Origin: Octopus sinensis
Lineage: Eukaryota
Direction of reading: 5' to 3'
Length of the DNA stretch: 64,000 nt
Assembly: GCF_006345805.1 (NCBI RefSeq)
Contig: NC_043020.1
Location: 15,066,001-15,130,000, forward strand
The notes beneath the pieces were generated by a model, which was not told the DNA's origin, did no database searches, and saw only the letters and a program-made list of their open reading frames with translations. Positions 4,815-63,540 of the stretch are shown piece after piece. The position numbers and the translations under genes were made by a program. Numbering within the stretch: the first letter of the stretch is position 1; the number at the start of each line of letters is the position of its first letter.

Positions 4815-5318
4815 TATAATAATGATGAAATTATTGTATACAGTGCTCAGGTGCACCACAACTTGTCAAAAGTGTGTATAGAGTATATGCAGTAATATAC
4901 AAATGTCTGGAAAGTGAACAGTGTATGAGTCAGATACATGCCTGCGTGTGTATGGAGGGGAGAAAATCAGGTGTAGTGTTGGCGAATCTCAGGAAGCATG
5001 GAAGTTTTCAAGGATGCAGTGCTCTGATAACTAACAACTGATGCCGGCAGTTTGTTCCATGCTTCAGCAACTCTCAGCGTGAAAAAAATGTTTCTGAAAG
5101 TCATGGGAGCTGTGTTGTTTTCTGACTTTGTAAATATGTCCACGGGTGTTAGACAGATGGAGTTTGAAAAGGTGCTCAGAGTTATTGTTAGTAGGATGGT
5201 TAATAATTTTATGGGTGTCTGCCAAGTCAGCTGCCAGACGTCGGAGTATCTTCAGACACATACAAAAGTTTAAGATGTTCCTGTCAGATATCAGTGAATT
5301 GAAGCATCTTGTTGAATA
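4815..5318 (-). mobile_element. CR1/L2-group LINE 3' end (same family as 17945-19255)
   Basis: HKIINH..NNSEHLFKLHLSNTRGHIYKVRKQHSSHDF.KHFF, with a tail at about 4815-4830. Confidence 0.8.
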
Positions 5319-5347
5319 ATCCATCAAACTTCTCTCTCTTTCTATCG

Positions 5348-5389
<42 letters not shown>

Positions 5390-5443
5390 AGAGAAATTGA
5401 AACTTTTGTTTTCATTATCATTTCTGTCTGTCTCTTGTTTCAG

Positions 5444-5642
5444 CTTGAGCAACTATTTTGTGGAAGTCGAAGTGAAGTCTGGGAAGTGAAGATGCTAATG
5501 GAATGTTGCCGTCCTGACCATGGTTATACTCATGATAGCAAAGCTGTCAAATATTTGTTTGAAATATTAAGTTCATACCTTGGAGAAGACCAACGCCGTT
5601 TCTTACAGTTTGTTACTGGCTCTCCAAGACTTCCAGTTGGTG
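5444..5642 (+). CDS. TRIP12: HECT E3 ubiquitin ligase, penultimate coding exon (TRIP12-like)
   Basis: Acceptor tttcag at 5438-5443, donor gtaaat at 5643. Translates [66 protein letters not shown], matching the recalled TRIP12 HECT C-lobe ([29 protein letters not shown]). Upstream exons were not found in the window. Confidence 0.93.
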
Positions 5643-6153
5643 GTAAATATCAGTGCTTATCTGTAGATTCTTAGTGCCCAGCACTCACTGCCACATACTA
5701 TTCTATTACATACTATACACACACACATCACTCTCTCACTTAGCACACTTTCAGTTAGTTCATATATATATATACATACATACACACACACCTAAGTGAA
5801 GGTGCGTGACTCAGTGGTTTGTGCATTGAGCTTATGATTGTGAGAAATGAGTTGTGCAACATGACTGGCTGGTGCCAAGCTCTATCAGCCTTTCCCTTGC
5901 ATAACATCAGTAGCGTGGAGAGGAGAGGCTGGTATGCATGGACAACAGCTGGTCTTACATTAAAAAAAACCCGAGGTTGTGCATTTGTTTGTGAGATGAC
6001 TTTCCACCTAGACTTGTACTGCAGAGGGGAACATCTTGGGTACATTCCTGGTCATTCGTGACTGACGGAGTCAAGAGTTTATATATATATATAATCTCAA
6101 AATATCATTGCTATTATGTTAAACTGTTATGTCCAAATTTGGCCAAATGTGAG

Positions 6154-10742: not shown

Positions 10743-11570
10743 TGCATATAAATATATGTATGTGTGCATACCACAGTATTCTTAGTAATCAGTAATGATC
10801 TTCCTCAGTCAATTGTGGACAGCCATCATCATCTCTTTCTCTCTCTCTCTCTCTCTCTACATATGTATATATATAATGTATGTATGTATGTGTATTTCTT
10901 ACTTGCCTGTTTGCTGACAAACCATCCACAAGGCTTTTATCACTCAGACAACTCATTCTTTTTTTTTTCAGTGTTCAACTGCAAAACCTATAACAACTAT
11001 TCTGTAATTGAAAATGTTTTAATTAGTTTCTATCGATTTGAACAAGGATTGCTTTCTTCCTATCTTTTCTTTATTCTTCCCCACTTTTTTTTAAATGTTC
11101 AATAAATATGATTGCATTTATTGCATTTACACGAGAGACATGTGTATTTGAAAACTTCTGTAGAAAGCTTCACCTAAAGCAGTCTATGAATTTTCTTTGT
11201 GGTTATCAACTATTGACTGGCTATGGATTAACATCAAGTAGAGACGAATCAATTGTGTTTGTTCTATTAACTCTTTAGCATTCAGATTTCCTTGTTGAAT
11301 GTATTGCTTATTTATTCAAAATATATTGAATTAATCACACATCTTGTAGTTTCAAGATTTCAATGCTGTTTATATATTTTTTTGAATGACTTTATAGGGT
11401 AAGTGTGAGGGGTTGGTTCTGATAAGTTTTAACATAAAACAGAATATTTGGGCCAGATATGGCCAGATCAAATGCTAAAGGGTTCAGCCTGCTATATCAG
11501 TCCCAAATATTCTACTGGTTTTATGTTTAAGCTGGCCAGATTTAGATTTAGCCTTTCACACCTACCCTAC

Positions 11571-11962
11571 TACTTACTTGTATTTGTGGCGACATTCACC
11601 CTGGGTGGGTTGAGTCGGCTTCTTCCACCACCCTCGAGGCATCTCGAACCATGGCTGTGGAAGAAGTTTAGTGGGAATATAAATTTCACAAGCGGTCCCC
11701 AACAAACAATCTCGCATGTAGAGACATCCTGTTTGCCACAGATTGTCCGCAGACGCAGATACAGAACGACTGAGGAGCCGCCGGTTGCCGAAACAGACAC
11801 TCCGAGGATTTTCACCGGGTTGTGGCCCTAATACTATTCGGTGTCAGACCAATCCGCCTTGGGTGGCCCTACCACGAACCGAAGTTCCCGACGACATTGC
11901 TCTGACACTACCCATTGCCAGCGTCCCCACCATGGTGAGGAGGGGATGGACTTCGGGGACGC
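11571..11962 (-). mobile_element. Short non-coding RTE-like retroelement with HDV-like ribozyme head
   Basis: GC-rich insert inside a piggyBac-type MITE, flanked by the duplication ctaccctac (11562-11570, 11962-11970). On - it ends in a CAAGTAAGTA tail and contains gtagggccacccaaggcgga, which resembles RTE/BovB 5' UTRs. Confidence 0.75.
11852..11962 (-). ncRNA. HDV-like self-cleaving ribozyme fold (possibly degenerate copy)
   Basis: P1 GCGTCCCC/GGGGACGC; P2 ATCC-CC/GGCGGAT; P3 TCC/GGT; L3 TCACCAT; P1.1 CA/TG; J1.1/4 GCAA; J4/2 CCCAA. All elements occur in HDV order. Confidence 0.65.
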
Positions 11963-12345
11963 TACCCTACAATACCATTCTAAGAACAATCATGTTGTTG
12001 AACTCTCAAAGCTACAAGAAAATGCATGATTAATTCAAAATAGTGTGAATAAATATGCATTACATTTGAGAGAATAATCTGAATGCTAAAGGGTTAAAAT
12101 ATTTTTTAAAAAACAGGTTAATTGTAGTAAATTAAAAAAGTATTACTAATTGGTATTAATGGATTACTGGGTTGAAAAATATTGAACCTTAATGAATCAA
12201 CATTTGCAAATTCATAGATCATCTTCAGATCTGTGGTGGTATATCGTTTATTCTACATATCTTGGTATTCTGTCATCAGAGGAAGCAAGTTGGTCTTTAA
12301 TCAGTGTTTAGTCAACATTTCTTGTTTGCTACTTGAGAAAATTTC

Positions 12346-16371: not shown

Positions 16372-16970
16372 TAGGCGCAGGAGTGGCTGTGTGGTAAGTA
16401 GCTTGCTAACCAACCACATGGTTCCGGGTTCAGTCCCACTGCGTGGCACCTTGGGCAAGTGTCTTCTACTATAGCCTCAGGCCGACCAAAGCCTTGTGAG
16501 TAGATTTGGTAGACTGAAACTGAAAGAAGCCCATCGTATATAGTTATATGTATATGTATATATATATATATATAGGAGTGGCTGTGTGGTAAGTAGCTTG
16601 CTAACCAACCACATGGTTCCGGGTTCAGTCCCACTGCGTGACACTTTGGGCAAGTGTCTTCTACTATAGCCTTTGGCTGACTTTGTGAGTGGATTTGGTA
16701 GACGGAAACTGAAAGAAGCCCATTGTATATATGTATATATATTTATGTGTGTGTATATATGTTAATGTGTCTGTGTTTGTCCCCCCAACATTGTTTGACA
16801 ACCGATGCTGGTGTGTTTACGTCCCCGTAACTTAGCAGTTCAGCAAAAGAGACCGTTAGAATAAGCACTAGGCTTACAAAGAATAAGTCCTGGGGTCGGT
16901 CTGCTCGACTAAAGGCGGTGCTCCAGCATGGCCACAGTCAAATGACCGAAACAGGTAAAAGAGTAAAGAG
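16372..16970 (+). mobile_element. SINE family B with duplicated 5' half, head-to-head with the - copy at 15970-16315
   Basis: Head repeated at 16372 and about 16575. Confidence 0.85.
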
Positions 16971-17944: not shown

Positions 17945-19255
17945 TGCCAACTTTAAAAATTCCACAGTGCTGAAATATGCAGATGACATCAAGCTGTACC
18001 TTGAGATAAAAAGGACAGATGCTGAACACTATAGATCTTTCCTCCAATCACACCTGGACACAATGGATCATGGACTGGCAACTCAAGCAGGCTGTGGGTA
18101 AGTGAACCACCATGTACTTTGGGAGGAAAAACCCGGTGTCCATATACTCTCTCCACAACACTAATATCAAGAAGTCTTGTATATGTGACCTGGGCATTGC
18201 TGTCAGCAGTAATTTGCGCCGAACAAAGCACATCTCTAAAATTGTCAAGAAGGCTGAGTGTGTCTTGGCATCACTCAGCAAGAACTTTGTCAGTCACTCT
18301 CCAGCAATCTATTTAAGGCTGTATATGGTTATGGGAGGCGCAATGGCCCAGTGGTTAGGGCAGCAGACTCGCGGTCGTAGGATCGCAGTTTCGGTTCCCA
18401 GACCAGGTGTTGTGAGTATTTATTGAGCGAAAACACCTAAAGCTCCACGAGGCTCCGGCAGAGGGTGGCGATCCCTGCTGTACTCTTTCGCCACAACTTT
18501 CTCTCACTCTTTCTTCTGTTGGCCTGCTCGCTTAGCCAGCGGGGTGGCATCATTTGAAGGCTAAAAAACAATGCGAAGCGCATTGTGACCAGCAATGTGT
18601 AGCAACAGCTGATAGCCTGGTTGGTCATGGTGATATGGCTGTGGCGCAGCCACAATTGGAATTTGCATCACCAGTCTGGAACCCCTATCTTGCTCAGGAC
18701 ATTGACCTCCTGGAAACTGTTCAGAGACATGCAACCAAGCAAATAGCCTCCATCAAGCATCTACCATACTCTGAATGCCTTGCTTCCCTGGGCATAGATA
18801 CATTGAAATTCCAATGTCTGGCAACTGACTTGGTAAACACACACAAAATTATTTACCATTGTGCCAACACCCACCTCGAGCACCTTTTTGAGCTCCATGT
18901 GTCTAACACATGTGGGCATTCCTACGAAGTCAGAAAGCAGCACAAGTACCATGACTTTTGGAAACATTTTTTCACACTGAGTTGCTGAAGCATGGAACAA
19001 CCTACCTGCATCAGTTGTTAGTTGCTGAGACATTGCATCCTTTAAAACCTCTATGCTTCCTGAAATTCGCCAACATTACACCTGATATCCCCACCTCCAT
19101 ACACATGCACACATATATATTCATGACTCATACACTGTTCACCTTCCTGACTTTTATACATAAGTCTATGTACTGTACATGCACCTTTGATGAGTTGTAG
19201 TGCACCTTTGATGAGTTGTAGTGCACCTGAGCACTATGCACAATTTTATTATTAT
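17945..19255 (+). mobile_element. CR1/L2-group LINE fragment with RT YADD motif, interrupted by a SINE at about 18335-18650
   Basis: LKYADDIKLY at about 17971. QLEFASPVWNPYLAQDIDLLETVQR after the SINE. (ATT)n tail at about 19245. Confidence 0.85.
18335..18640 (+). mobile_element. SINE family A head with tail type Y, inserted in a CR1-like LINE
   Basis: Same head; tail ggcctgctcgcttagccagcgggg...tgtgaccagc. Confidence 0.8.
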
Positions 19256-20603: not shown

Positions 20604-20830
20604 TTAACCCTTTAGTGTTCAGATTATTCTATCAAACATAATGCTTATTGATTCCCATTGATTTGAATTAATCATGCATTATCTCATATCTTCAAGATCT
20701 TGATGGTGTAATTACTTAATGTAGAATAACATTGTAGGGTAGGTGTGAGGGCCTGGATCTGGTCAGTTTGAACATAAAACAGATTCGCTATTTTGGCCGG
20801 ATATGGCCGGTTTAAATACTAAAGGGTTAA
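20604..20830. mobile_element. piggyBac-type MITE (TTAA-CCCTTTAG...CTAAAGGG-TTAA)
   Basis: TTAA at 20604-20607 and 20827-20830 flanking CCC/GGG TIRs. Related copies at about 164-370, 516-705, 11267-11486, 11487-12097, 20870-21041, 31313-31542, 39556-39775, 44019-44239, 50205-50628. Confidence 0.8.
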
Positions 20831-22894
20831 ATTTTGGGGAAAAAATGCAGATTATACTCGAGGATTTACGGTATATTCAAACTGGTCAGCTCCAGCCTCT
20901 CACATTCATGCTATGTCATTCTTAGAATATACAATCACATCATTGAAATCACAAAGCTACAAGACAATGCATAATTAATTCAAAACAATATGAATAAATA
21001 AGCTTTACATTTGACAGAGCAATCTGAATGCTAAAAGGTTATACGATGATGGTGATGACAATGATGTGTGTGTATGTATATAAACATGGTGTATGTATAT
21101 AGGCGTAGGAGTGACTGTGTGGTAAGTAGCTTGCTTACCAACCACATGGTTCCGGGTTCAGTCCCACTGCGTGGCACTTTGGGAAAGTGTCTTCTGCTAT
21201 AGCCTCGGGCCAACTAAAGCCTTGTGAGTGGATTTAGTAGATGGAAACTGAAAGAAGCCCGTCGTATATATGTATATATATATATATATTTGTGTGTGTG
21301 TTTGTGTGTCTGTGTTTGTCCCCCTCCCCAACATCGCTTGACAACCGATGCTGGTGTGTTTACGTCCCCGTCACTTAGCAGTTCGGCAAAAGAGACCGAT
21401 AGAACAAGTACAAGGCTTACAAAGAATAAGTCCTGGGGTCGATTTACTCGACTAAAGGCGGTGCTCCAGCATGGCCACAGTCAAATGACTGAAACAAGTA
21501 AAAGAGAGAGGGTAAAGAATATATATATTTATGCACATTTCACAAATGAAAAAAATAATCGGTAACAGTTAATATTTTTCAAAGAATTTTATTGTAGTTG
21601 GTTTTATGGAGATGTTTCTGGTGTGCACTCAACCGATGCCTGCATCCGTTGAACGAATATTAAAAACAATGATGTTGATAACGATGACAATTTTAAAGTC
21701 TTCAATTAAGTCTCCCTGAATTGCTTTGCGAGATTCAAATATCTGATTTAAACATGGCATTAACATGTTTTTACTGGCATTAGAAGATGGCTTGATAAAT
21801 TTGAAAGACATTTTGGATAGCAGATAACGGGGTTCAAAATAATACTTAAAAAGAACTAAACCATTTATTTAAAGCTGTAATGAAAGCCATCACTTCTCTT
21901 CTTGGACTCTCTATAACCATTGCATAGTTCCTGCTACACCGTGCTGGATTAAAGTGAAGAGAAACCTTAGGCTATTCCCATTTATAAGGAACCCCTCCTC
22001 CTAAAAAGCCTATGACAAGTGTCAAAAATATATACATCTTGGATTTTGGGGTCCCTTATCATCAGCCTGCCAACCATATAAGTAAATTTGGTGCATACGC
22101 TTCATGAAAAATTGGTAATTGGCTATCATCATTCCTTGTCCTACATGCACACACATTCTCTCTCTCTCTCTCTCTCTCTCATTTTCTCTTTATCTTTACT
22201 CCCTTAATTTTTGGTCATCTTTACATAGGTATATAAACAAGGAAGGATTCTTATGTTATCAGTTGTGAAAAAAAAATAGCTTCTTTAAATTCTCATGCAT
22301 CTCATTACTATTGGACTATTATCCTGTAAGTTTGGTTTGAAGGACACGAAATTATTTTTCCAAATTCATTTTGTGTTAAATCATCTCATGTGTTTCTGTA
22401 TATGTGACACTGGATCGTTTATATGACCATTCCTAAATGACACTGGATCAATTGGTGGAAATTGTGAAGTTCATATACAAGAGACACTTGTAGAATCCTT
22501 ACATAACATCTCTGTAGTTACTGGTCTATTTTGAAATCCCTTATTTTACAGCTGTAGAGATACTACACAGAAGTGATTTGTGAAATCATTACGCAATAGC
22601 TGAAGACTTACTGCATAAACACCGGTAGTTGTGAGTTCATAATTTAGGATTATTGTATGACTATATATATATATATATATATATACATACATACATATAT
22701 ATACATACATACATACATATACATACATATACATACATACATACATATACATACATACATATACATACATACATACATACATATACATACATACATACAT
22801 ACATACATACATTTACATACATACATACATACATATATATACATACATACATACATATACATACATACATACATATACATACATACATACATAC

Positions 22895-22925
<31 letters not shown>

Positions 22926-22926
22926 C

Positions 22927-22958
<32 letters not shown>

Positions 22959-22970
22959 TATATATAATTG

Positions 22971-23586: not shown

Positions 23587-24660
23587 TTAGTTGAAAGCAT
23601 AAATCTGAGGAGGAAAACTGTGTGTCCATCTAACTGATTCATGCGGAAAAACTACATATTTTTGGCAACAAAGTTCAGTTAAATCTTGTTCTATTCCTTT
23701 CAGGAATAACCGTATACTTTCTGCACATTCACCAAGATTTAGAGCTAAGAGTTCTGGACAGTCAAGATACAGCTGCTGCAACTGATTGCAGCCAAACATG
23801 TTTAAATAGCGCAGCAAACACTGTTGGATTGCGACTTTTTCCAGATTGCGACATTTCTCCAAATTCAAATGTGCTATGTTTGAACAGCCAATCAACGCCA
23901 TCTGCAGGACATAATCTGTCATTTGGCAACGATAAAGGACAATAGTTCTTGCTAAGGGAGTGCAGATAGAAAGCAAGTTGAGTTTACAGTCAAAGAATCG
24001 TAAGAAACCAACGGCCGTGAGAGCTTGGATGACACAAGAATCTAACACCAGTTGATCATCACTACAGAGGTTGAGTTCTATGGAATCTACACTGACGCAC
24101 TGGATAGTCATTGTCTTTAATGAAGGTAGACCTATCAAAGCTACTTTACATAAATGGTTAGCTATGATATAGACATGACTCACTGTAATAATATCACTCT
24201 CCGATTCTGTGTGGAGTAGACGTAAGGTAGGGCTTCTTATGTGAAGTGTTTCACAAGCAAAATCAGCCAAAAGACACAGTTCTTGTACATTAGGAATGGT
24301 AAATTCATCTAAAGTCAAGCTGTCTTGTGAAATACAACCAAGTTTCAAGCAGATAATCGAAGGATTATTTTGAAGCGTTTCTTTGAAGCTATTCATTTCG
24401 ATTTCTTCACAGTAAGATAATTCCAGTATGGTGAGGCGTTGACTACGAATATTTAGTGTCCGTAACACATCACTGCCATTGACAGCCACCCGGCGAAGTT
24501 TGGATGAGAACAGCTCCAAATGTTCGATTGATTCTAGACCATAGTCGATTTCTGTCACACGTAAAGAGTCGGCTTCGACGCTGACAAACACGACATTCCA
24601 CAAATTGTAAAGATAGAGCTTTTGAAGGGAAGAACTTAGAAGACGGATACCGTGGAGATG
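23587..24660 (-). CDS. F-box/LRR-repeat protein, coding exon 3 (terminal, LRR-rich)
   Basis: Acceptor ctctattttcag ends at 24661, phase 0. Open 1074 nt with repeated Cys-containing LRRs (e.g. LTILELSYCEEI, IAHLNLEKCRNL, LRYLNMFGCNQL). Stop TAA at 23587-23589. Confidence 0.9.
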   Translation of the reverse strand, partial: HLHGIRLLSSSLQKLYLYNLWNVVFVSVEADSLRVTEIDYGLESIEHLELFSSKLRRVAVNGSDVLRTLNIRSQRLTILELSYCEEIEMNSFKETLQNNPSIICLKLGCISQDSLTLDEFTIPNVQELCLLADFACETLHIRSPTLRLLHTESESDIITVSHVYIIANHLCKVALIGLPSLKTMTIQCVSVDSIELNLCSDDQLVLDSCVIQALTAVGFLRFFDCKLNLLSICTPLARTIVLYRCQMTDYVLQMALIGCSNIAHLNLEKCRNLEKVAIQQCLLRYLNMFGCNQLQQLYLDCPELLALNLGECAESIRLFLKGIEQDLTELCCQKYVVFPHESVRWTHSFPPQIYAFN

Positions 24661-24884
24661 CTGAAAATAGAGAAAATATAATAAAAATTTAATAAATTTA
24701 AATTTAAACAAATAACAATTATAACATTAAAGAAAAAATAACAATGAATAATAAAACTAACAATATTAAAATGAAATCTTTTATCTTTTACTTGTTTATC
24801 ATTTGACTGTGGCCATACTGGGACACTACCTTGAAGAATTTTAGTCAAATTTATGGACCCCAATACTTATTATTAGTGCTATAA

Positions 24885-28639: not shown

Positions 28640-29270
28640 TTTACTTCATCATCATCATCATCATCATCATCGTTTAGCGTCCGCTTTCCATGCTAGCATG
28701 GGTTGGACGTTTCAACTGGGGTCTGGGAAGCCCGAAGGCTGCACCAGGTCAGTCAGATCTGGCAGTGTTTCTACAACTGGATGCCCTTCCTAACGCCAAC
28801 CACTCCATGAGTGTAGTGGGTGCTTTTTATGTGCCACCGACACAGATACCAGACGAGGCTGGCAAACGGCCACGCTCAGATGGTGCTTTTTACGTGCCAC
28901 CATCGCGGAGGCCAGGCGAGGCTGGCAACAGCCACGATCGGATGGTGTTTGTTACATGCCACCAGCACGGAGGCCAGTTGATGTGGTGCTGGCTACGGCC
29001 ACCTTCGGATGGTTCTCTTATGTGCCACCGGCACTGGTACGACAACTACAAATTCCATTGATGTTGATTTGATTTTTTGATTTTCACTTGCCTCAACAGG
29101 TCTTCACAAGTAGAGTTATGTGTCCCAAGAAGGAAGGTATGCACAGGTGGACTGACTACGTCCCAGGTAGGGGCCACGGGTATTGGCCTCACTTGTCCTG
29201 CCGGGTCTTCTCACGCACAGCATACTTCTAAAAGGTCTCGGTCTCTGGTTGTTTCAGTCATTTGACTGCT
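28640..29270 (-). mobile_element. RTE LINE 3' UTR, longest copy (ORF2 end, ~62-bp tandem units, (GAT)n tail)
   Basis: On - it begins with an RDRDL.KYAVREKTRQDK*-like ORF end, then tandem GGCACGTAAAAAGCACC units, ggttggcgttaggaagggcatccag and (GAT)n. Confidence 0.75.
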
Positions 29271-31312: not shown

Positions 31313-31542
31313 TTAACCCATTAGCATTTAAACTGGTCATATCCGGCCAAAAGTATTCTGCCTGTTTTATGTTCAAACTGGCCAGATCTGGTCTCTCACA
31401 CCTACCCTACAATATTGTTTTAAAAATTAACAGCTACCTCATCAAAATCTCATTGCTACAAGATTAATGAATGATTAATTCAAAACGATGTAGATGAAGA
31501 AGCATTAATTTTGGCAGAATAATGTGAACACTAAAGGGTTAA
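31313..31542. mobile_element. piggyBac-type MITE, about 55 bp from the F-box exon 2 donor
   Basis: ttaacccattagcatt...cactaaagggttaa. Confidence 0.8.
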
Positions 31543-31598
31543 AGATTCACTGCCTGGAAACAGAAAATAATAAAACAGAAAAACAATGTTTCTCTTAC

Positions 31599-31917
31599 CT
31601 CACAATTGCTGATACAAAGTTTCTTCAAGTTCTGAAATTTCTTCACCAAATCCCACAATTCTTCCATCTCAATTGGAACAAAATGTAGACACAAAACAGT
31701 GACAAGACTTGCAAATTCCGAATCAGCCACACTTTGAATAATTCTAGCTCCTTCGCTCATTGCTCTCTCACTACGTACATCATTCAGTAAAAGACCAGAG
31801 TTGATCTTGAACTTAACTGATTCCAACTCAGGCAATATCTCCAGGAACCTCATTACTCCATCCGCTGTTATTTGCCAACAGGCATTCAAGGAGATTTCTT
31901 TCAAGTATGGAAAATAA
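31599..31917 (-). CDS. F-box/LRR-repeat protein, coding exon 2
   Basis: Acceptor ...ttatttgaacag ends at 31918. First base T completes CG|T (Arg), giving [25 protein letters not shown] (AMN1-type LRR). Donor gtaaga at 31598, phase 0. Confidence 0.88.
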
Positions 31918-32139
31918 CTGTTCAAATAAAGAAATATAACATTTACATACAGTATATATATATATTACAGAGATGTACTTGCATAGCAAGCGACTTGATC
32001 TGAGATCATGTGCAGAAACAAAAACAATTGGAGCATTGAAGATGTTTGTAAGCCATTTAAGAACACACAAAAATGTTGAAGTGAATCTAACGACTTTTTG
32101 TGTGTTCTTAAATGGCTTACAAACATCTTCCATGCTGCA

Positions 32140-32385
32140 ATTGTATAAATATATATATATGCTTATATATATATATATACATATATATATACATATATAT
32201 ATACATATATATATACATATATACATACATATATACATACATATATACATATATATACATATATACATATATAATACATATATACATATATATATACATA
32301 TATACATATATATATACATATATACATATATATATACATATATATATACATATATATATATATTACATATATATATATAATATAC

Positions 32386-32421
<36 letters not shown>

Positions 32422-32462
32422 CATATATAATATATACATATATATATATATACATATATATA

Positions 32463-32493
<31 letters not shown>

Positions 32494-32528
32494 CTATATA
32501 TACATATATATATATATATATATACACA

Positions 32529-32582
<54 letters not shown>

Positions 32583-32770
32583 CTATATATATATATATAT
32601 ACATATATAATAATATACATATAGATATATATATATATACAATATATATCTATACATATATTATTATATATACATATCTATATATATATATAATATATAT
32701 ATATATTATACATATTATATATAGATATCATATATACATATATATATATATATATACATATATATAATAT

Positions 32771-32802
<32 letters not shown>

Positions 32803-32870
32803 CATATATACATATATATATATATATCTATACATATATATATATATATATATACTTCTATATAATATAA

Positions 32871-32920
<50 letters not shown>

Positions 32921-32965
32921 TATATTATATATACATATATATATAACACATTGACATATAATATA
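32140..32965. repeat. (AT)n/(ATAC)n microsatellite block
   Basis: About 820 bp of near-pure AT dinucleotide. Confidence 0.95.
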
Positions 32966-34426: not shown

Positions 34427-35482
34427 TACCTTAGAAGAATAAAAACTGAATTCAATGCATAAACCATAAAATGTGAATTAGTATGAAAATCTCTTATACA
34501 CACACACACATATATATAAATGTGAGTATATAAGAACAAAGATAAATATACATACACACATATACAGCCACAGCATGGCCACCTGTAGATATATGTATGT
34601 GCGTGTGTTGTGTGTGTATGTGTGTGTACATACACATAGACACACACACACATGTATATATGTTATTCTAAGGTGTATGCTAATGGAGGTGAGAGCTAAT
34701 TAGAATTACACTGTTGATTATAAGAAAGAATCACTGTCCATAATGGCTAATTCTGGTCAAAAATGTAAGGGAGACAAACTAAAAATATCATAAAATGTTC
34801 TATAAATTTTGGGGTGAGTCTTAACATTACATGCATGGGAGACAACTCTGTACATGTTCTTGTATTATTGGAAATCTTCAGTAATAACTAGACAAACACG
34901 ATTTGATATTTGTGTGTTCATTCATTTAAAGACTGTTTTTTTCATATTAGAATGGATTGGACAGCAGACGAAATACTGCTAAGCGTCTGCTGTTACATTC
35001 TGAGTTCAAATTCCATCAAGGTCGACTTTGCCTTTCATTCTTTCGGGGTCGATAAATTAAGTACCAGTTACGCACTGGGGTTGATGTAATCAACTTAATC
35101 CCTTTGTCTGTCCTTGTTATTCCCCTGTATGTTTAGCCCCCTGTGGGCAATAAAGAAATAACATACATATACATACATACATACATACATACATACATAC
35201 ATACGGGATCTTGGGGAGAGGATGCAATTCCTTAATTCATATGCTACAAATGATCATGGTACCTGGAACAATACAAAACTGCAAGTCTTTCCTTTTCTCT
35301 TTTTGATTCATAGTAAATGTTGACCGTCCACCTACTTGGTAACAAGGTTGTGAAGGAACGAGTCTTGTTTTAACCATCATCCTATAAATCGTATGGAGGT
35401 CTTGCAGATTTTTTTAGCCCCAGGTACTGTGTTCATTTGGAGCATATAAATTAAGGATTTGCATTCTCTCCCCAAGATCCCT

Positions 35483-35883
35483 ATGTATGTATGTATGTAT
35501 GTATGTATGTATGTATGTATGTATGTATGTATGTGTGTATGTATGTATGTTTATGTGTATGTATGTATGTCTATGTATGTATGTATGTATGTATGTATGT
35601 ATGTATGTATGTATTTATGTATGTGTGTATGTATGTATGTTTCTATGTATGTATGTGTGTGTGTGAATGTATGTATGTGTGTGTGTGTGTATGTTTATAT
35701 GTATGTATGTATGTATGTAAGTATGTATGTATGTATGTATGTATGTGTATGTGTGTATGTATGTATGTGTGTGTATGTATGTATGTATGTATGTCTATGT
35801 ATGTATGTATGTATGTATGTGTATGTATGTATGTATGTGTATGTATGTATGTATGTGTATGTGTGTATGTATGTATGTATGTT

Positions 35884-35914
<31 letters not shown>

Positions 35915-36099
35915 CTATGTATGTATGTATGTGTATGTATGTATGTATGTAAGTATATGTGTATGTGTGTATGTATGTGTGTATGCATGTATGTATGCAT
36001 GTATGTATGTATGTGTGTGTATGTATGTATGTCTATGTATGTATGTATGTGTATGTATGTATGTATGTGTATGTGTGTATGTATGTATGTATGTATGTT

Positions 36100-36130
<31 letters not shown>

Positions 36131-36266
36131 CTATGTATGTATGTATGTGTATGTATGTATGTATGTATGTATGTATGTATGTGTGTGTGTATGTATGCGT
36201 GTGTGTATGTATGTATGTATGTGTGTATGTATGTATGTATGTATGTGTGTGTGTATGTATGTATGC

Positions 36267-36299
<33 letters not shown>

Positions 36300-36364
36300 C
36301 GTATGTATGTATGTATGTATGTATGTGTGTGTGTATGCATGTATGTATGTATGTATGTATGTAT
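35483..36364. repeat. (ATGT)n tetranucleotide array
   Basis: About 880 bp; source of the MYVC ORFs. A reverse-orientation (ACAT)n array lies at 22660-22965. Confidence 0.95.
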
Positions 36365-41701: not shown

Positions 41702-41734
<33 letters not shown>

Positions 41735-41792
41735 ATATATGTATATAGATATATATATATATATATATTTGTATAATTATCTATATATATAT

Positions 41793-41833
<41 letters not shown>

Positions 41834-41844
41834 ATATATATTTG

Positions 41845-41875
<31 letters not shown>

Positions 41876-42108
41876 ATATTGTATATATATTTGTATATGT
41901 ATATGTATATATTATATATATATATGATATGTGTATATATATATATATATATGTATGTGTATATATATATATATATATGTATGTATATTATGTTTATATA
42001 TATATGTATATATATGTTTATATAATATGTAATTATGTTATATATATATGTAGATTATGTTTATATATATATATGTATATATATGTGTATATATATATGT
42101 ATATATAT

Positions 42109-42147
<39 letters not shown>

Positions 42148-42174
42148 ATATATAATATATATATATATATATAT

Positions 42175-42257
<83 letters not shown>

Positions 42258-42550
42258 TATATATATATATAGATATATTATATATATATATATATATATA
42301 GATATATATATATATGATATATATAGATATATATATCATATTATCATCATCATCATCATTATTATTATTATTAGATTATCATCATCATCAGATCATCATC
42401 ATCATCATATCATCATATTATTATTATTGTTATTTATTATTTTAATACTTTAATTTTTATTATTATTATTATTATTAATGTCGTCGTCGTCGTCGTCAGA
42501 TCATCATCATATATTATATTAGTATATTATATATATATTATTATTATATT

Positions 42551-42605
<55 letters not shown>

Positions 42606-42668
42606 TATATATATAGATATATATATAGATATATATATAGATATAGATATAGATATATATATATATAT

Positions 42669-42708
<40 letters not shown>

Positions 42709-42761
42709 TATATATATAGATATATATATATATCTATATATATATATATAGATATATATAT

Positions 42762-42806
<45 letters not shown>

Positions 42807-42825
42807 TATATATATATATATATAT

Positions 42826-42858
<33 letters not shown>

Positions 42859-42906
42859 TATATATATATAGATATATATATAGTATATATATATAGATAT
42901 ATATAT

Positions 42907-42983
<77 letters not shown>

Positions 42984-43010
42984 GATATATATATATATTA
43001 TTATATATAT

Positions 43011-43043
<33 letters not shown>

Positions 43044-43150
43044 TATATATATATATATATATAGATATATATATATATAGATATATATATATATATATAT
43101 ATCTATATATATATATATATATATAGATATATTATATATTATATATATAT
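41702..43150. repeat. (AT)n/(ATAG)n block with an internal (ATC)/(ATT) segment
   Basis: About 1.45 kb low-complexity tract. Confidence 0.95.
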
Positions 43151-44426
43151 ACAACACCACACACACACACACACACAAACATACATATATAATCCACCAT
43201 AATAGATGTATTCAGCATGTTACCATTTATGATTTGCTTGAAAAGAATAGTTACCATATATCATTCAAATTCAAAGAGAGAAGCTGTAGATTAATATAGT
43301 AAAGTCAGAAATAAAAGAAAAAAAATTAAAAATTAAAATAATCAGAAAAGTAAAAATGTAAATAACAAAATAGGTTTTCAAAGAAATTGGTTTCAAAGGA
43401 AGATATGGTTACTAAGTTAGAAGTATTTTCCAAAGAAAGATACGTTGACCATGATAATATTAATTTAGATCACTGGTTCTCAACAAGGGTCTATATGATC
43501 TGGGTGTCCATCTAAAATTTTTGAGGGTTCACAAATGTAAAATAGTAAATCGTGAATCCATGGTAGTGTTTTCAGGGGACCATGGACACATTTTACTTTA
43601 GATATTTTTTTTGTGAGGGTAAAGACTCATGGCTCAGTGGTTAGAGCATCAGGCTACAATCATGAGATAGTAAGTTCAATTCCTGGACTGGACTGTTTTT
43701 TTGTGTTCTTGGACAAGACACTTTATTTCACATTGCTCCAGTTCACTCAGCTGTAGAAATGAGTTGTGACATCACTTGTACCAAGCTGTATAGGCCTTTG
43801 TCTTTCCTTTGGATAATATCAGTGGTGTGTAAAGGGGACGCTGATATGCATGGACAACTGCTGGTCTTCCATGAACAACCTTGCCTGAACTTGTGCCTCG
43901 GAGGGTAGCTTTCTAGATGCAATCCCATGGTCATTCATGACTGAAAGAGGTCTTTACCCTTATTTTTTATATTTATTGCAAGAAACAGCTAGGTTTCTTT
44001 CTCTAATGCTTGTAGTTTAAACCCTTTAGTGTTCACTTATTCTCCAAATTAATCCTTTTATCCCATTGTTTTGCAACTAATCATCATTATCTTGTAGCTA
44101 TGAGATTTTGATGAGGTAGCTGTTAATTTTTAAAATGATATTGTAGGGTTGGTGTGAGAGACCAGATCTGGCCAGCTTGACATAAAACAAGCAGAATACT
44201 TTTGGCCGGATATGGCCGGTTTAAATGCTAAAGGGTTAACATGTTTCTGGCCACAGAAAAAAATGTTCTCTTAGAGAGTCTACACAAACCTACGCAAGTA
44301 AATGGGTGAAAAACAAAATAGGAATTTCAAAAGAATTATGTATAAAACTAGTTTTTAAACATTGAATGGCTATGGGGGTCCACAAGAATAAGATAGTAAT
44401 TAAAGTTGTCCATGAGAAAAAATATA

Positions 44427-45280: not shown

Positions 45281-45434
45281 TAAACCATAAGTTTAGATCA
45301 GCAGTTCTCAATCATGATCCATATGGCCCCTGAGATTTTAGGGATCCATGCAGCAAATTAGTAAATTGGGGATCCCCAATAGTATTTTAAGGACCCCTGT
45401 AAAAATTTTGCTTTAGATGTATGTATTGCAAGAA

Positions 45435-45873
45435 TGCAATTGTCTTCCCAATAGCAACATATGGATGCGAGACCTGGACACTAAAGAAAGCTGACCAGAA
45501 GAGAATTAATGCATTCGAGCTTTGGTGTTGGAGAAGACTTTTGCGGATTCCATGGACAGCGAGGCTCACCAATGGAGAAGTTCTTAAGCAGATAAGGCCG
45601 AAAATGTTGCTAGAAGCTAGGATCACCAAGCATAGATTGGTATATTTCGGTCATATTATGCAGAGAAAATCCCTGGAGAAGGACATCATGCTTGGAATGG
45701 TCGGTGGCAAGAGAGGAAGAGGCCGACCAAGAACCCGCTGGCTTGACACCATCAAGAGGGATGCTGGAATGGACATAGCCAATCTGAAAGAAGCGGCCCA
45801 GGATAGAACTGACTGGAGGACACTGATCCATCGAGTAACCGAGAGTCGACTTCGACTGAGCGGATAGAGAGAA
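45435..45873 (+). mobile_element. RTE-BovB-like LINE, 5'-truncated 3' end
   Basis: AIVFPIATYGCETWT...FELWCWRRLLRIPWTAR...YFGHIM...GRPRTRWLD...RVTESRLRLSG*. TSD attgcaagaa at 45425-45434 and 45874-45883. Inserted in a hAT-type MITE. Confidence 0.9.
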
Positions 45874-46299
45874 ATTGCAAGAAAACAGCTAGGTTTCTTC
45901 ACCAACATTTTACAGAATTCAACCTATACGAGTTAATATGTGAAAAACGAAATAGGAATTTTGAAAGAAGTTTCTATAAAACTAGTGTTTGAACATTGAA
46001 TGACTATAGGGGCCCACTCGAGTAAAACAGTAATCAAAGGGGTCCATAGATAAAAAAATAGTTGAAAACCGTTAGTTTAGATGAATAATAGAATAAATAA
46101 ATAAATAGATAAATAAATGAATAATGAATAATGAATAAGGCATATAGTCAATAGAAAGAGAGAGAGATAAAAGGAGAACAAAATAAGGCTTAGAATCAAA
46201 TGAGAGTTCAGAAACAGAAAGGAGGGCTTTAGTTGGTTTTGAGGAATGGCAGTGCTTTCTCAAGAACCTTGGTATAGGATCCCTACATGAATATTCTCA

Positions 46300-46610
46300 T
46301 CATCATCGTCATCATCATCGTTTAACGTCCGTTTTCCATGCTAGCATGGGTTGGACGGTTCAACTGGGGTCTGGGAAGCCAGAAGGCTGCACCAGGCTCC
46401 AGTCTGATCTGGCAGTGTTTCTACAGCTGGATACCCTTCCTAACGCCAACCACTCCGTGAGTGTAGTGGGTGCTTTTTACGTGCCACCAGCACAGGTGCC
46501 AGATGGGGCTGGCAAACAGCCACGATCGGATGATGCTTTTTACGTGCCACCGGCACGGGGGCCAGGCGAGGCTGGCAAATGGCCATGGTCGGATGATGCT
46601 TTTTACGTGC
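46300..46610 (-). mobile_element. RTE 3' UTR copy
   Basis: Consensus with three tandem units. Confidence 0.8.
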
Positions 46611-50202: not shown

Positions 50203-50285
50203 CTTTAATCCTTTAGCATTTAAACCAATCATATCTGGTGAAAATACTCTACTTCTTTAATGCTCAAACTGGCCAAATCTGGTCT

Positions 50286-50487
50286 ATTATAGTTCTATAT
50301 TTAAGAGATGAGGAATTATGTACATTATTTACAGTTGACGGATATTTCTCCTCATCTTGTTTGTTGTTAACACAACGTTTCGGCTGATATACCCTCCAGC
50401 CTTGATGAAGGCTGGAGGGTATATCAGCCGAAACATGTTAACAAACAGGATGAGGACAAATATCCGTCAATTGTAAATAATGTACAT
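50286..50487 (+). mobile_element. Palindromic insertion of a Penelope-like terminal-repeat fragment with degenerate hammerhead core
   Basis: 10-bp TSD aatctggtct (50276-50285, 50488-50497). Inverted arms 50315-50403 and 50408-50490. Contains TTGATGA-A-GGCTG-loop-CAGCC-GAAAC. Confidence 0.6.
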
Positions 50488-50769
50488 AATCTGGTCTCTT
50501 ACACCTACCCTACAATGTCATATTAAAAGTAAACAATCACATCATTGAAACAAAGCATGGTTAATTCAAATCAATGTGAATAAATAAACATTACATTTGA
50601 CAGAATAATCTGAATGCTAAAGGGTCAAACAAAGTCACACTGTGCATGTCATCAGTCATCTTTAAGGATGACTAGAAGTATTTTCAAAATAAGAGAAGGC
50701 TATGGAAAGCTTTAGAAAATAGGGGAATCATTGATAAAAAGCTTCAAACTAAATTAAGTTTCAAAATTA

Positions 50770-51121
50770 TAACGTAAGAGAACCATCCGAACGTGGCTGT
50801 AGCCAGCGCCGCATCAACTGGCCTCCGTGCCCGTGGCACATAAATAACACCATCCGACCATGGCCGTTGCCAGCCTTGCCTGGCCTCTGTGCCAGTGGCA
50901 CATAAAAATCACCATCTGAGCGTGGCCATTCGCCAGCCTCGTCTGGCACCTGCGTCGGTGGCACGTAAAAAGCACCCACTACACTCATGGAGTGGTTGGT
51001 GTTAGGAAGGGCATCCAGCTGTAGAAACACTGCGAGATCTGACTGGGCCTGGTGCAGCCTTCTGGCTTCCCAGACCCCAGTTGAACCGTCCAACCCATGC
51101 CAGCATGGAAAGCGGACGTTA

Positions 51122-51157
<36 letters not shown>
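50770..51157 (+). mobile_element. RTE 3' UTR copy
   Basis: Consensus with tandem units and a long (GAT)n tail. Confidence 0.8.
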
Positions 51158-51158
<1 letters not shown>

Positions 51159-51497
51159 CACAGAATTCCTCATTGCATAAAAGTTTAGCAGCACAAAGCT
51201 TTGTAATGAATGGTGACAAAGAATCTTATAGACAGGAACGGGGAAGCAAGTCTGAGAGTTTTGTAGGATTATTAAAATTCTTGGTAAAGTTTGATTGTCT
51301 CAGAAATGTGAAAATGAACCATCAATGAGTATCCTAGCTTTCTCTCTTAGTATTGAATATATTCAACTTACAGCTTCTCCTGCTCACCACAAATTACTAC
51401 ATACTATCCATTTATATCTGGCCCTCCTGTTTGACTGTATCAGGAGCAAGTAGCATGTTCATTATATTGATATTAATTTTAAGGAGAAAATAATTAC

Positions 51498-59109: not shown

Positions 59110-59407
59110 CAACGAGGAAACTTCTACAGGGTCACCCACCCTGCTAGAAATATCAACCTAATCTCCGTTATGTCATACCCTACTGTTTTAAAACGATGAG
59201 GATGTGTTTGATTATGTAGTCTTAGACATGCTATGCTTGGACATAAAATGTACGGGATGGTCACATCTGCAACGTATTTGATTACAAGAATGCCTGATCA
59301 AGACTGACCTGGGGTTAAACATCAATTACTACTGCTACTTTCGTCAGTTATATTTTACCACTTATGAAGAAGAAAAATAGGAAGAAAAAGTCATGTTTGT
59401 CACTCAC

Positions 59408-59925
59408 CGTGCTATCTGTAAAAGATCGTCATCCGTAAGAGAGAAACCTCCATTGATTTGGACCTGTTCCATATTACTGAGAGGTGCCAGGCTCTCAACT
59501 ACGGCTCTTGTCCACAAAACTGGTAGACGAAGATAGCGCAGATTCCTCAAGCGGGGAATGAGAGAGAATACGCTTTCGTAGACTGGTGACTGTTCTCTCC
59601 ATATAAGTTTCTGTATGTGATGTCCGTAAACACGAAATATAGAACAGACGAGACTAAAGTGCCAGTAACTATACCGTGTCGGATTAATATGTAATGATCG
59701 CCACAGTGTAGCTGTATGTTTTAGTACGTCTCGCCATTTACGACAAACAAAAGCCAAAAGTGACAACTGGTCCTCTACAGGATGAAAGTACTGAAAGATC
59801 CTCGCTATAAGTTCACCCGGCAACTCGTTGATGTAGCATCTCTCAGTTCTTCTCGTCTGACCCTCAAACTGGACAATTTCTCCCCAACTTTCATCGTCGA
59901 CAGCGACATTCATAAGTTCACTCAT
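59408..59925 (-). CDS. F-box/LRR-repeat protein, coding exon 1 (F-box domain)
   Basis: ATG at 59925. F-box motif INELPGELIARIFQYFHP..LSLLAFVCRKWRDV, then LRR-like segments. Donor gtgagt at 59407, phase 2 (CG|). Confidence 0.9.
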
Positions 59926-60998: not shown

Positions 60999-61351
60999 TC
61001 ATCATCATCATCGTTAAACGTCCGTTCTCCATGCTAGCATGGGTTGCACGGTTCGACCGGGGATCTGGGAAGCCAGAAGGCTGCACCAGGCTCCAGTCTT
61101 ATCTGGCAATGTTTCTACAGCTGGATGCCCTTCCTAACGCCAACCACTCCGTGAGTGTAGTGGGTGCTTTTTACGTGCCACCTGCATAGGTGCCAGGCGG
61201 GGCTGGCAACGGCCATGGGCAGAACGGTGCATTTTACGTGCCACCGGCACTGAAGCTAGTCAAGGCGGGGCTGGCATCAGCCACGATTCGGATAGTGCTT
61301 TTTACGTACCACCAGTCCAGAGGTCTTGGCATCTGCCGGGTGCCAGTCATA

Positions 61352-61352: not shown

Positions 61353-61394
<42 letters not shown>

Positions 61395-63539: not shown

Positions 63540-63540
63540 A

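What the first reader, a model, noticed from the sequence alone, without database searches (positions are those of the whole stretch)
11571..11962. Short RTE-tailed retroelement headed by an HDV-like ribozyme whose cleavage site marks the insertion boundary
Seen: a ~390-bp GC-rich insert with TSD (c)taccctac inside a MITE. On the - strand its first 111 nt give an HDV double-pseudoknot layout. P1 is GCGTCCCC (11962-11955) with GGGGACGC (11928-11921). P2 is ATCC-CC (11947-11942) with GGCGGAT (11858-11852). P3 is TCC/GGT, L3 is TCACCAT, P1.1 is CA/TG, followed by GCAA (11918-11915) and J4/2 CCCAA with candidate catalytic C at 11862. The predicted G1 (11962) sits at the TSD edge, within 1 nt. The element ends in a hairpin (cttcttccac/gtggaagaag) and a CAAGTAAGTA tail and has no recognisable ORF2 remnant. 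Known: HDV-like ribozymes process the 5' ends of RTE and R2 retrotransposons. Inference: a non-autonomous, ribozyme-processed (not tRNA/Pol III) SINE-like family mobilised by an RTE LINE. This copy has a P3 mismatch, an L3 G-to-A change, a P2 bulge, an 8-bp rather than 7-bp P1 and a weak P4, so it may be inactivated.
Basis: partly seen in the sequence, partly recalled or inferred. Interest (0 to 1): 0.8.

Follow-up and report, generated by a model that had tools for sequence, protein, structure and literature searches.

The report
Short retroelement with HDV-like 5' fold
A 392-base non-coding retroelement has inserted into an older transposon, and its first ~111 bases can fold like a hepatitis-delta-type self-cleaving ribozyme starting exactly at the insertion boundary; this is a known way for such elements to trim their RNA, but here it rests on one imperfect copy and is unproven.

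Summary
A 391/392-bp GC-rich insert (11571-11962, sense on the minus strand) sits in a palindromic MITE (11267-12097). It is flanked by a perfect 9-bp target-site duplication, and five uninterrupted MITE copies align across the rebuilt empty site. A layout this good occurs at about 2-3 x 10^-5 of positions in composition-matched random sequence, and nowhere else in the window. Rfam's HDV-F-prausnitzii model aligns with its first position on 11962 and the same P1, P3 and L3, but scores only 11.5 bits against a threshold of 44.

My best reading (about 0.6) is a two-part non-autonomous LINE derivative whose 5' end descends from an HDV-like ribozyme. This copy is probably weak or dead: the conserved L3 G is an A, P3 has two pairs, and a competing nested fold is at least 9 kcal/mol more stable. 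I found no second copy anywhere, so covariation, family status, uniform 5' ends and the RTE partner are all untested. The RTE label rests only on a two-unit tail. The concept is already published (R2 SIDEs, NARTc/RIME, Bov-A). At best this is a new member of a known kind.

The parts
11267..12097 (.). Host repeat: palindromic MITE, about 430 bp without the insert, with 20-nt terminal inverted repeats TTAACYCTTTAGCATTCAGA
   Evidence: There are 13 termini in the window against 0.02 expected, and five uninterrupted copies align across the rebuilt empty site.
11562..11570 (.). Target-site duplication, 3'-side copy (CTACCCTAC on the + strand)
   Evidence: This sequence occurs once in uninterrupted MITE copies.
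11962..11970 (.). Target-site duplication, 5'-side copy.
11571..11962 (-). Inserted non-coding retroelement, 391/392 nt, 54% G+C, CpG observed/expected 0.80 against 0.48 for the window
   Evidence: No terminal inverted repeats, no tRNA, no protein homologs in any frame.
11955..11962 (-). P1 5' strand GCGUCCCC. The predicted cleavage site is 5' of G11962.
   Evidence: Position 1 of Rfam RF02682 aligns here. The full-length MFE fold predicts this hairpin.
11921..11928 (-). P1 3' strand GGGGACGC (8 Watson-Crick pairs; G1 pairs with C, not U)
   Evidence: The P1 hairpin evaluates to -15.5 kcal/mol.
11942..11949 (-). P2 5' strand (AUCCCC, extendable by CC)
   Evidence: The P2 duplex evaluates to -7.1 kcal/mol.
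11929..11941 (-). P3 (UCC/GGU: 2 pairs plus a U.U mismatch) enclosing L3 UCACCAU (11938-11932). The conserved L3 G position is A11933.
   Evidence: The Rfam RF02682 alignment gives the same P3 and L3 and flags the mismatch.
11915..11920 (-). UG (P1.1 partners of L3 C11937 and A11936) followed by GCAA (J1.1/4)
   Evidence: UGGCAA aligns to AGGCAA in the RF02682 consensus.
11864..11914 (-). P4 region: no clean stem. It contains the GAAC-UUCG-GUUC tetraloop hairpin (11887-11876) and the GUGGU/GCCAC hairpin.
11859..11863 (-). J4/2 CCCAA. The candidate catalytic C is 11862, followed by C-A-A.
   Evidence: This is the only C-N-R-A motif in the first 200 nt that is followed by a P2 partner of 4 bp or more.
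11849..11858 (-). P2 3' strand GG(C)GGAU(U)GG
11841..11908 (-). Competing nested domain: helix GUGUCAGA (11908-11901) with UCUGACAC (11848-11841), plus inner pairs that sequester J4/2 and the P2 3' strand
   Evidence: MFE folds. For 125 nt: -50.4 kcal/mol against about -41 for HDV-compatible pairing.
11619..11666 (-). 3' stem-loop: 10-bp perfect stem CUUCUUCCAC/GUGGAAGAAG with an inner CUCGAG-type hairpin. Candidate recognition site for the reverse transcriptase.
11571..11580 (-). 3' tail CAAGTAAGTA (two AGTA units, no poly-A). It shares GTA with the target site.
   Evidence: The 9-mer is expected 1.16 times per window by chance.

Best explanation
The insert is a short, non-coding, non-autonomous non-LTR retroelement of the two-part kind. 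It keeps only the 5' and 3' ends of a parent LINE.

Its first ~111 nt descend from an HDV-like self-cleaving ribozyme.

**Inferred mechanism**
1. The element has no promoter of its own that I can recognise, and is transcribed as part of a longer transcript.
2. The nascent RNA folds into the P1/P2/P3/P1.1 double pseudoknot.
3. The cytosine at 11862 catalyses cleavage just 5' of G11962, giving the RNA a defined 5' end.
4. The parent LINE's reverse transcriptase recognises the 3' stem-loop and short repeat tail.
5. That enzyme copies the RNA into a nicked target, here GTAGGGTAG, where the tail's GTA can anneal. This produces the 9-bp duplication.

**Shown:** the precise insertion, the TSD, the unique HDV-like layout at the exact 5' end, the 3' hairpin, and the lack of coding capacity.

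**Inferred:** descent from a ribozyme, cleavage, the read-through transcription, and the identity of the helper LINE (RTE is only one candidate).

This particular copy is probably a weak or dead ribozyme.
For: - **Clean insertion:** a 9-bp TSD lies inside a MITE that is continuous across the rebuilt empty site.
- **Better than chance:** a descriptor at the candidate's quality hits only 11962(-) in 128 kb. It hits 2.2e-5 of positions in composition-matched random sequence. Given a 5' hairpin, the remaining features occur in 36 of 71,343 cases. An additive score gives 3.2e-5.
- **Independent register:** Rfam RF02682 (HDV-like ribozyme of F. prausnitzii) puts model position 1 on 11962 and picks the same P1, J1/2 GAA, P3, L3 and GGCAA. 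Its consensus also closes P1 with G-C.
- **3' end:** a 10-bp hairpin next to a short repeat tail.
- **No other origin found:** no tRNA, no other Rfam family, and no protein homolog in any frame.
- **Literature:** LINE clades with 5' HDV-like ribozymes (RTE, Ingi, R2) are the ones known to spawn two-part non-autonomous derivatives that keep the exact 5' end (PMC5786205; PMC3414825; PMC6765202).
Against: - The Rfam score is 11.5 bits against a gathering score of 44, with E = 5.6 even in a 141-nt search. Nothing appears in larger searches.
- The L3 G, one of the few conserved nucleotides, is an A. That change abolished cleavage in a Nasonia R2 ribozyme.
- P3 has only 2 pairs plus a U.U mismatch, P2 needs a bulge, and P4 is not a stem.
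- The first 115 nt fold no better than shuffles (z = +1.1).
- A nested alternative that sequesters J4/2 and the P2 3' strand is at least 9 kcal/mol more stable once nt 122 is made.
- High CpG retention (0.80 against 0.48) and a perfect TSD suggest a young copy. The defects may therefore already have been in the source element.
- There is one copy only, so no covariation and no evidence of a family or of uniform 5' ends.
- Orientation and LINE clade rest on a two-unit tail that is not itself significant.
Confidence: 0.6

Rival explanations
1. This is an ordinary 5'-truncated (dead-on-arrival) copy of the 3' untranslated region of a LINE (CR1, RTE, Dong/R4 or another clade). The 5' end is wherever reverse transcription stopped, and the HDV-like layout there is a coincidence in a GC-rich, hairpin-rich sequence.
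For: - 5'-truncated copies are the commonest kind of LINE insertion (general knowledge).
- The element contains at least three perfect helices of 8-10 bp, so it is hairpin-rich throughout.
- The ribozyme core has three defects, and Rfam is far below threshold.
- No family with a shared 5' end could be shown.
- A loose HDV descriptor hits 0.55% of positions.
Against: - A layout as good as this at one given position has a probability of about 2-3e-5.
- An independent model picks exactly the boundary base as position 1.
- There is no trace of a coding region in 392 nt.
Confidence: 0.25
2. This is a genuine full-length non-autonomous element whose 5'-terminal hairpin serves another purpose, such as RNA stability, a packaging or translation signal, or a by-product of second-strand priming. 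It is not a ribozyme, and the remaining HDV-like features are fortuitous.
For: - The 8-bp P1 hairpin is the only strongly predicted part of the layout (-15.5 kcal/mol).
- P2, P3 and P1.1 are weak.
- The thermodynamically favoured fold of nt 43-122 is a separate nested domain.
Against: - Given such a hairpin, the other features (P3 adjacent to P1', L3 starting with UC, a 2-bp P1.1, and CNAA followed directly by a 6-bp P2 that abuts P3) co-occur in only about 5e-4 of random cases.
- L3 and the GGCAA junction resemble a known HDV-like consensus.
Confidence: 0.12
3. This is a classical Pol III SINE (tRNA-, 5S- or 7SL-derived head) or a DNA transposon.
For: - A-box-like TGGCAATGG (11920-11912) and B-box-like GGTTCG (11880-11875) lie about 40 nt apart.
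- A 9-bp TSD would also fit some DNA transposons.
Against: - ARAGORN finds no tRNA, and Rfam finds no tRNA, 5S, 7SL or snRNA even at E = 10.
- The box-like motifs start 43 nt into the element, and the putative T-arm does not pair.
- The two ends share no inverted repeat.
Confidence: 0.03

Closest known systems
HDV-like self-cleaving ribozymes at the 5' ends of non-LTR retrotransposons (R2, RTE, Baggins/LOA, L1Tc/Ingi, R4, R1)
   Same: - Position at the very 5' end of the element.
- Double-pseudoknot order P1-P2-P3-L3-P3'-P1'-P1.1-P4-J4/2(C)-P2'.
- A variable, poorly structured P4, as reported for R2.
- Presumed role in releasing the element's RNA from a longer transcript.
   Different: - No coding region follows.
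- The L3 G is replaced by A.
- P3 has a mismatch, P1 has 8 bp, and G1 pairs with C.
- No family or activity data.
- Below every Rfam threshold.
Two-part (internally deleted) non-autonomous LINEs: R2 SIDEs, NARTc/RIME, Bov-A, Vingi derivatives
   Same: - Only a 5' end and a 3' end remain, with no ORF.
- The exact 5' end is retained.
- These arise in clades whose LINEs carry a 5' ribozyme (PMC5786205; PMC3414825).
   Different: - The parent LINE was not found, so the deletion origin is inferred.
- R2 SIDEs are rDNA-specific and NARTc/RIME are trypanosomatid, whereas this one is dispersed in an animal genome with octopus-like repeats.
Rfam RF02682, HDV ribozyme of Faecalibacterium prausnitzii (drz-Fpra-1)
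   Same: - Best-aligning known family.
- G-C closing pair of P1, J1/2 GAA, a P3 of xCC/GGu, L3 U-C-x-x-C-x-U, and xGGCAA after P1'.
- The second P1.1 pair is U-A in the consensus and A-U here.
   Different: - Bacterial, with a short P4.
- The score of 11.5 bits is not evidence of homology.
- The J4/2-P2 part did not align because P4 is about 50 nt here.
Classical SINEs, including cephalopod Ceph-SINEs (tRNA head + CORE + RTE-derived part)
   Same: - Short and non-coding.
- LINE-dependent, with a LINE-type 3' end.
- Ceph-SINE bodies contain an RTE 5' part.
   Different: No Pol III head. If anything heads it, it is a ribozyme.

Membership tests
HDV-like self-cleaving ribozyme | Nested double-pseudoknot topology with P1, P2, P3, P1.1 and P4 in the canonical order | tested here: met
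   The layout is unique. Caveats: P3 has 2 pairs plus a U.U mismatch, P2 has a bulge, and P4 is not a clean stem.
HDV-like self-cleaving ribozyme | Catalytic C at the start of J4/2, followed by N-A-A and then the P2 3' strand | tested here: met
   C11862-C-A-A is followed by GG(C)GGAU. It is the only such motif with a P2 partner in 200 nt.
HDV-like self-cleaving ribozyme | Conserved L3 nucleotides: 5' U, C(s) that form P1.1, and the G that forms the reverse wobble with the U | tested here: not met
   L3 is UCACCAU. The U and C are present and the G position is A11933. G-to-A abolished cleavage in the Nasonia R2 ribozyme (PMC3774820).
HDV-like self-cleaving ribozyme | P1 of 6-7 bp starting at the cleavage-site G (G.U or G-C closing pair) | tested here: met
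   There are 8 Watson-Crick pairs with G1-C42. Rfam RF02682 treats the 8th pair as an insertion, and its own consensus closes P1 with G-C.
HDV-like self-cleaving ribozyme | Score at or above the gathering threshold of a curated covariance model | tested here: not met
   The best match is RF02682 at 11.5 bits against 44. No HDV, CPEB3 or drz family is listed in wider searches.
HDV-like self-cleaving ribozyme | Compensatory base changes across homologs | not testable with these tools
   No second copy was found. The host genome is not in any searchable DNA collection.
HDV-like self-cleaving ribozyme | Mg2+-dependent self-cleavage giving a 5'-OH at G1 | not testable with these tools
   This needs an experiment.
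Non-LTR retroelement insertion | Precise insertion with a target-site duplication, no terminal inverted or long terminal repeats, and a 3' tail | tested here: met
   The TSD is 9 bp and the empty site is rebuilt. No inverted termini. The tail is only (AGTA)2.
Two-part non-autonomous LINE / RTE-mobilised element | 5' and 3' ends shared with an autonomous LINE of the RTE clade | tested here: inconclusive
   The only RTE in the window (45421-46140, (ATAA)n tail) shares no sequence. The host genome could not be searched. The helper could equally be another clade.
Two-part non-autonomous LINE / RTE-mobilised element | Multi-copy family with a uniform 5' end | not testable with these tools
   There is a single copy in 64 kb and no translated copies in 5.8 billion proteins.
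Classical SINE (Pol III head) | tRNA-, 5S- or 7SL-derived 5' head with A and B boxes at the 5' end | tested here: not met
   ARAGORN finds none. Rfam finds none at E <= 10.

The most novel reading that the evidence does not exclude
The A-for-G L3, the 8-bp P1 with a G-C closing pair and the long branched P4 may not be decay. They may be the working form of a cephalopod lineage of HDV-like ribozymes. If so, a sizeable share of the hundreds of 'unclassified SINE' families reported in octopus genomes (893 recently active unclassified families in O. vulgaris, PMC13282606) would be ribozyme-headed rather than Pol III-headed elements.
Probability: 0.08. Interest if true: 0.55.

Novelty: new member of a known kind. 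Interest (0 to 1): 0.35.

Why it matters
If it is real, this would extend ribozyme-processed, promoter-less non-autonomous retroelements to this host. The host looks like a cephalopod, but I could not verify that. I found no report of HDV-like ribozymes in mollusc retroelements in the held literature. It would also suggest a way to classify some of the many unclassified short retroelements of octopus genomes. It would not change how such elements are understood, because 5' HDV-like ribozymes in LINEs and their internally deleted derivatives have been described since 2010-2012. As it stands, it is one imperfect copy with good positional statistics and no comparative or biochemical support.

Tried and rejected
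**Searches for other copies (all failed)**
- BLASTN of the element against the window at word size 7 found no other copy.
- Exact-pattern scans of viral contigs with two patterns gave 0 hits.
- The one metagenome scan gave 9 hits. All were 20-30-nt chance matches in 52-68% G+C contigs.
- A scan of prokaryotic genomes gave 0 hits.
- A protein search with the 73-aa antisense frame found nothing.
- A protein search with all stop-free six-frame segments joined by X also found nothing. The same database does hold ORFs from short Logan contigs for the window's RTE.
- An exhaustive phmmer search with the 89-aa sense frame returned only a bacterial FN3-repeat protein, matched through 11 weak repeats. 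This is spurious.

**Host identity and parent LINE**
- An RTE protein search gave no long host contigs. The best hit is a 1-kb Logan contig from run ERR11630394, which is not mentioned in any held paper.
- The host species was therefore not established.

**Alternative readings rejected**
- An alternative HDV layout uses the strong 11908-11901/11848-11841 helix as P4 and the following CGAA as J4/2. I rejected it because no P2 partner of 4 bp or more follows.
- A tRNA-like reading of the A-box-like and B-box-like motifs fails on ARAGORN, Rfam and manual pairing.
- A DNA-transposon reading fails because there are no terminal inverted repeats.
- The Rfam 'mir-3913' hits at 11426-11532 are the MITE palindrome, at 26 bits against a threshold of 100.

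**Papers not held**
- The primary HDV-like descriptor papers (Webb & Luptak 2011, Ruminski 2011) are not held.
- My descriptor therefore rests on secondary sources and general knowledge.

Full report
**What is at 11571-11962**

Read on the minus strand, the interval is a 54% G+C block in AT-rich surroundings. It is bounded by GTAGGGTAG on both sides (11970-11962 and 11570-11562). I joined the two flanks with a single copy of that 9-mer and compared the result with the window. The rebuilt sequence aligns straight across the junction with five uninterrupted copies of the same repeat, for example ...CTCTCACACCTACCCTACAATAT... at about 31.4 kb.

That repeat is a roughly 430-bp palindromic MITE with perfect 20-nt inverted termini at 11267-11286 and 12078-12097. 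Thirteen such termini occur in the window against 0.02 expected.

So the insert is a clean 391- or 392-bp insertion with a 9-bp target-site duplication. The insert has:
- no terminal inverted repeats
- no tRNA
- no Rfam family at threshold
- no other copy in the window

Its CpG observed/expected ratio is 0.80 against 0.48 for the window. Together with the perfect duplication, this suggests a fairly recent insertion.

**The HDV-like layout**

- P1: 8 Watson-Crick pairs (11962-11955 with 11928-11921).
- P2: AUCCCC with GG(C)GGAU, extendable to 8 pairs with two bulges.
- P3: two pairs plus a U.U mismatch.
- L3: UCACCAU.
- P1.1: a two-pair helix to the UG that follows P1'.
- GCAA, then a roughly 50-nt P4 region.
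- J4/2: CCCAA with C11862, directly followed by the P2 3' strand.

I enumerated every C-N-R-A motif in the first 200 nt. This is the only one followed by a P2 partner of 4 bp or more, so the layout is unique.

**Is it more than chance?**

- A descriptor set at the candidate's own quality finds only 11962(-) in both strands of the window. Its terms were P1 of at least 7 bp, P3 of at least 2 of 3 pairs adjacent to P1', L3 starting with UC, a 2-bp P1.1, CNAA, and P2 of at least 6 bp with at most one bulge abutting P3.
- In 1.5 Mb of first-order Markov sequence with the element's composition, that descriptor hits 33 start sites, or 2.2e-5 per position. Given a 5' hairpin, the remaining features co-occur in 36 of 71,343 cases.
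- That descriptor was tuned after the fact, so I also used an additive score. Eight of 249,740 random positions reach the candidate's score, which is 3.2e-5.
- A very loose descriptor hits 0.55% of positions and is uninformative.

The chance of a layout this good at the one or two bases allowed by the TSD is therefore of order 1e-4 per retroelement end.

Independently, a 141-nt Rfam search lists RF02682 (HDV ribozyme of F. prausnitzii) at 11895-11962(-). Model position 1 falls on 11962, and the alignment gives the same P1, J1/2 GAA, P3, L3 and GGCAA junction. The score is only 11.5 bits (gathering score 44, E = 5.6 over 4227 families). It confirms the register and the resemblance but does not establish membership.

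**Evidence against a working ribozyme in this copy**

- The L3 G, one of the handful of conserved nucleotides, is an A. The same change abolished cleavage in a Nasonia R2 ribozyme, and its absence went with inactivity in sow bug R2 (PMC3774820).
- P3 has a mismatch and P4 is not a stem.
- The first 115 nt fold no better than shuffles (z = +1.1).
- Once nt 122 is transcribed, a nested domain forms. It consists of GUGUCAGA 11908-11901 with UCUGACAC 11848-11841, plus inner pairs using GGCGGAUUG. It sequesters J4/2 and the P2 3' strand. The energy is -50.4 kcal/mol, against about -41 for HDV-compatible pairing including the -7.1 kcal/mol P2 duplex. At 114 nt the two are about equal (-37.2 against about -35).
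- The copy looks young, so these defects may already have been in its source.

**The 3' end and the helper**

The element ends with a 10-bp perfect stem (11666-11657 with 11628-11619) that encloses a smaller hairpin. About 38 nt follow, then CAAGTAAGTA. This looks like the 3' end of a LINE whose reverse transcriptase recognises its own 3' structure. The tail's GTA overlaps the target's GTA.

The tail is only two AGTA units. The 9-mer is expected 1.16 times per window by chance. The window's one RTE, a 5'-truncated BovB-like ORF2 end at 45421-45867 with an (ATAA)n tail to about 46140, shares nothing with the element.

'RTE-tailed' is therefore a guess. RTE is a reasonable candidate because that clade combines 5' HDV-like ribozymes, short repeat tails and two-part derivatives (PMC5786205). 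Other ribozyme-bearing clades are not excluded; R4/Dong, for example, is very active in octopus (PMC13282606).

**Search for relatives**

All of the following failed:
- BLASTN in the window.
- Pattern scans of viral contigs.
- The metagenome scan, which returned only chance 20-mers in GC-rich contigs.
- A scan of prokaryotic genomes.
- Protein searches with the antisense 73-aa frame and with all stop-free six-frame segments.
- An exhaustive phmmer search with the 89-aa sense frame, whose only hit is a bacterial FN3-repeat protein matched through 11 weak repeats.

These results confirm that there is no recognisable coding remnant. They also mean that covariation, copy number, uniformity of 5' ends and the parent LINE could not be examined.

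The host genome is not in any DNA collection available here, and I could not verify that it is a cephalopod. The nearest RTE ORF (81% identity) lies on a 1-kb Logan contig of run ERR11630394.

**Verdict**

The best explanation (about 0.6) is a two-part non-autonomous LINE derivative whose 5' end descends from an HDV-like ribozyme that defines the RNA's 5' end. This copy is likely a poor or dead ribozyme.

The main rival (about 0.25) is a 5'-truncated LINE 3'-UTR fragment with a coincidental fold. A 5' hairpin with another role (about 0.12) and a Pol III SINE or DNA transposon (about 0.03) follow.

The idea itself is established:
- R2 SIDEs (PMC3414825)
- NARTc/RIME and Bov-A-type two-part elements, and their link to 5' ribozymes (PMC5786205)
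- reviews noting LINEs and non-autonomous SINEs with HDV-like ribozymes (PMC6765202)

At best this is a new member of a known kind, in a host group for which I found no such report. Interest is 0.35.

Noticed in passing
window 11267-12097, and 12 other termini (e.g. 164-183, 20604-21042, 31313-31542, 44220-44239, 50205-50628): An abundant palindromic MITE family of about 430 bp with TTAACYCTTTAGCATTCAGA termini, possibly with TTAA targets. Its foldback produces sub-threshold Rfam microRNA-like hits (mir-3913, 26 bits against 100).
   Followed up: partly
window 45421-46140 (+): A 5'-truncated BovB-like RTE: the ORF2 C-terminal 148 aa, a 3'UTR and an (ATAA/AATGA)n tail. The nearest protein is 81% identical, on a 1-kb Logan contig of run ERR11630394. 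It is unrelated in sequence to the 392-bp element.
   Followed up: partly
window 18554-18988 (+): An ORF fragment with the C-terminal motif pattern of CR1-like LINE reverse transcriptases (...LETVQRHATKQI...). A 21-nt tandem repeat lies downstream at 19180-19228.
   Followed up: no
window 5309-5674 (+); 59404-59925, 31539-31925 and 23587-24711 (-): Host gene exons: a HECT-domain E3 ligase exon on the + strand, and an F-box/leucine-rich-repeat gene on the minus strand. The 392-bp element lies between them, about 11.6 kb downstream of the F-box gene on the same strand, so read-through co-transcription is conceivable.
   Followed up: no
window 28690-29061, 46300-46610, 50767-51219, 61163-62174, 63170-63619: Many copies of a GC-rich SINE-like repeat. 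Its translation repeats '...LAVFLQLDALPNANHS...VGAFYVPP...', with internal 62-nt tandem units at 28819-29034.
   Followed up: no
window 16379-16760: A tandem pair of 195-bp units with a tRNA-like B box (GGTTCCGGGTTCAGTCCC), probably a Pol III SINE dimer.
   Followed up: no
window 32144-32945, 41703-43151, 35482-36364, 22662-22966: Very long microsatellites: (TA)n of 0.8 and 1.4 kb, (TATG)n of 0.9 kb, and a (TATA/TACA)n array.
   Followed up: no
window 11571-11843: The element's 3' two-thirds is free of stop codons in two sense and two antisense frames (80-89 codons each). None has any protein homolog. This is most likely a composition effect, with few TA dinucleotides.
   Followed up: yes
window 11637-11649 (-): A GGTTCGAGATGCC motif in the loop of the 3' hairpin resembles a Pol III B box (GGTTCGANNCC). 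It is probably coincidental.
   Followed up: no
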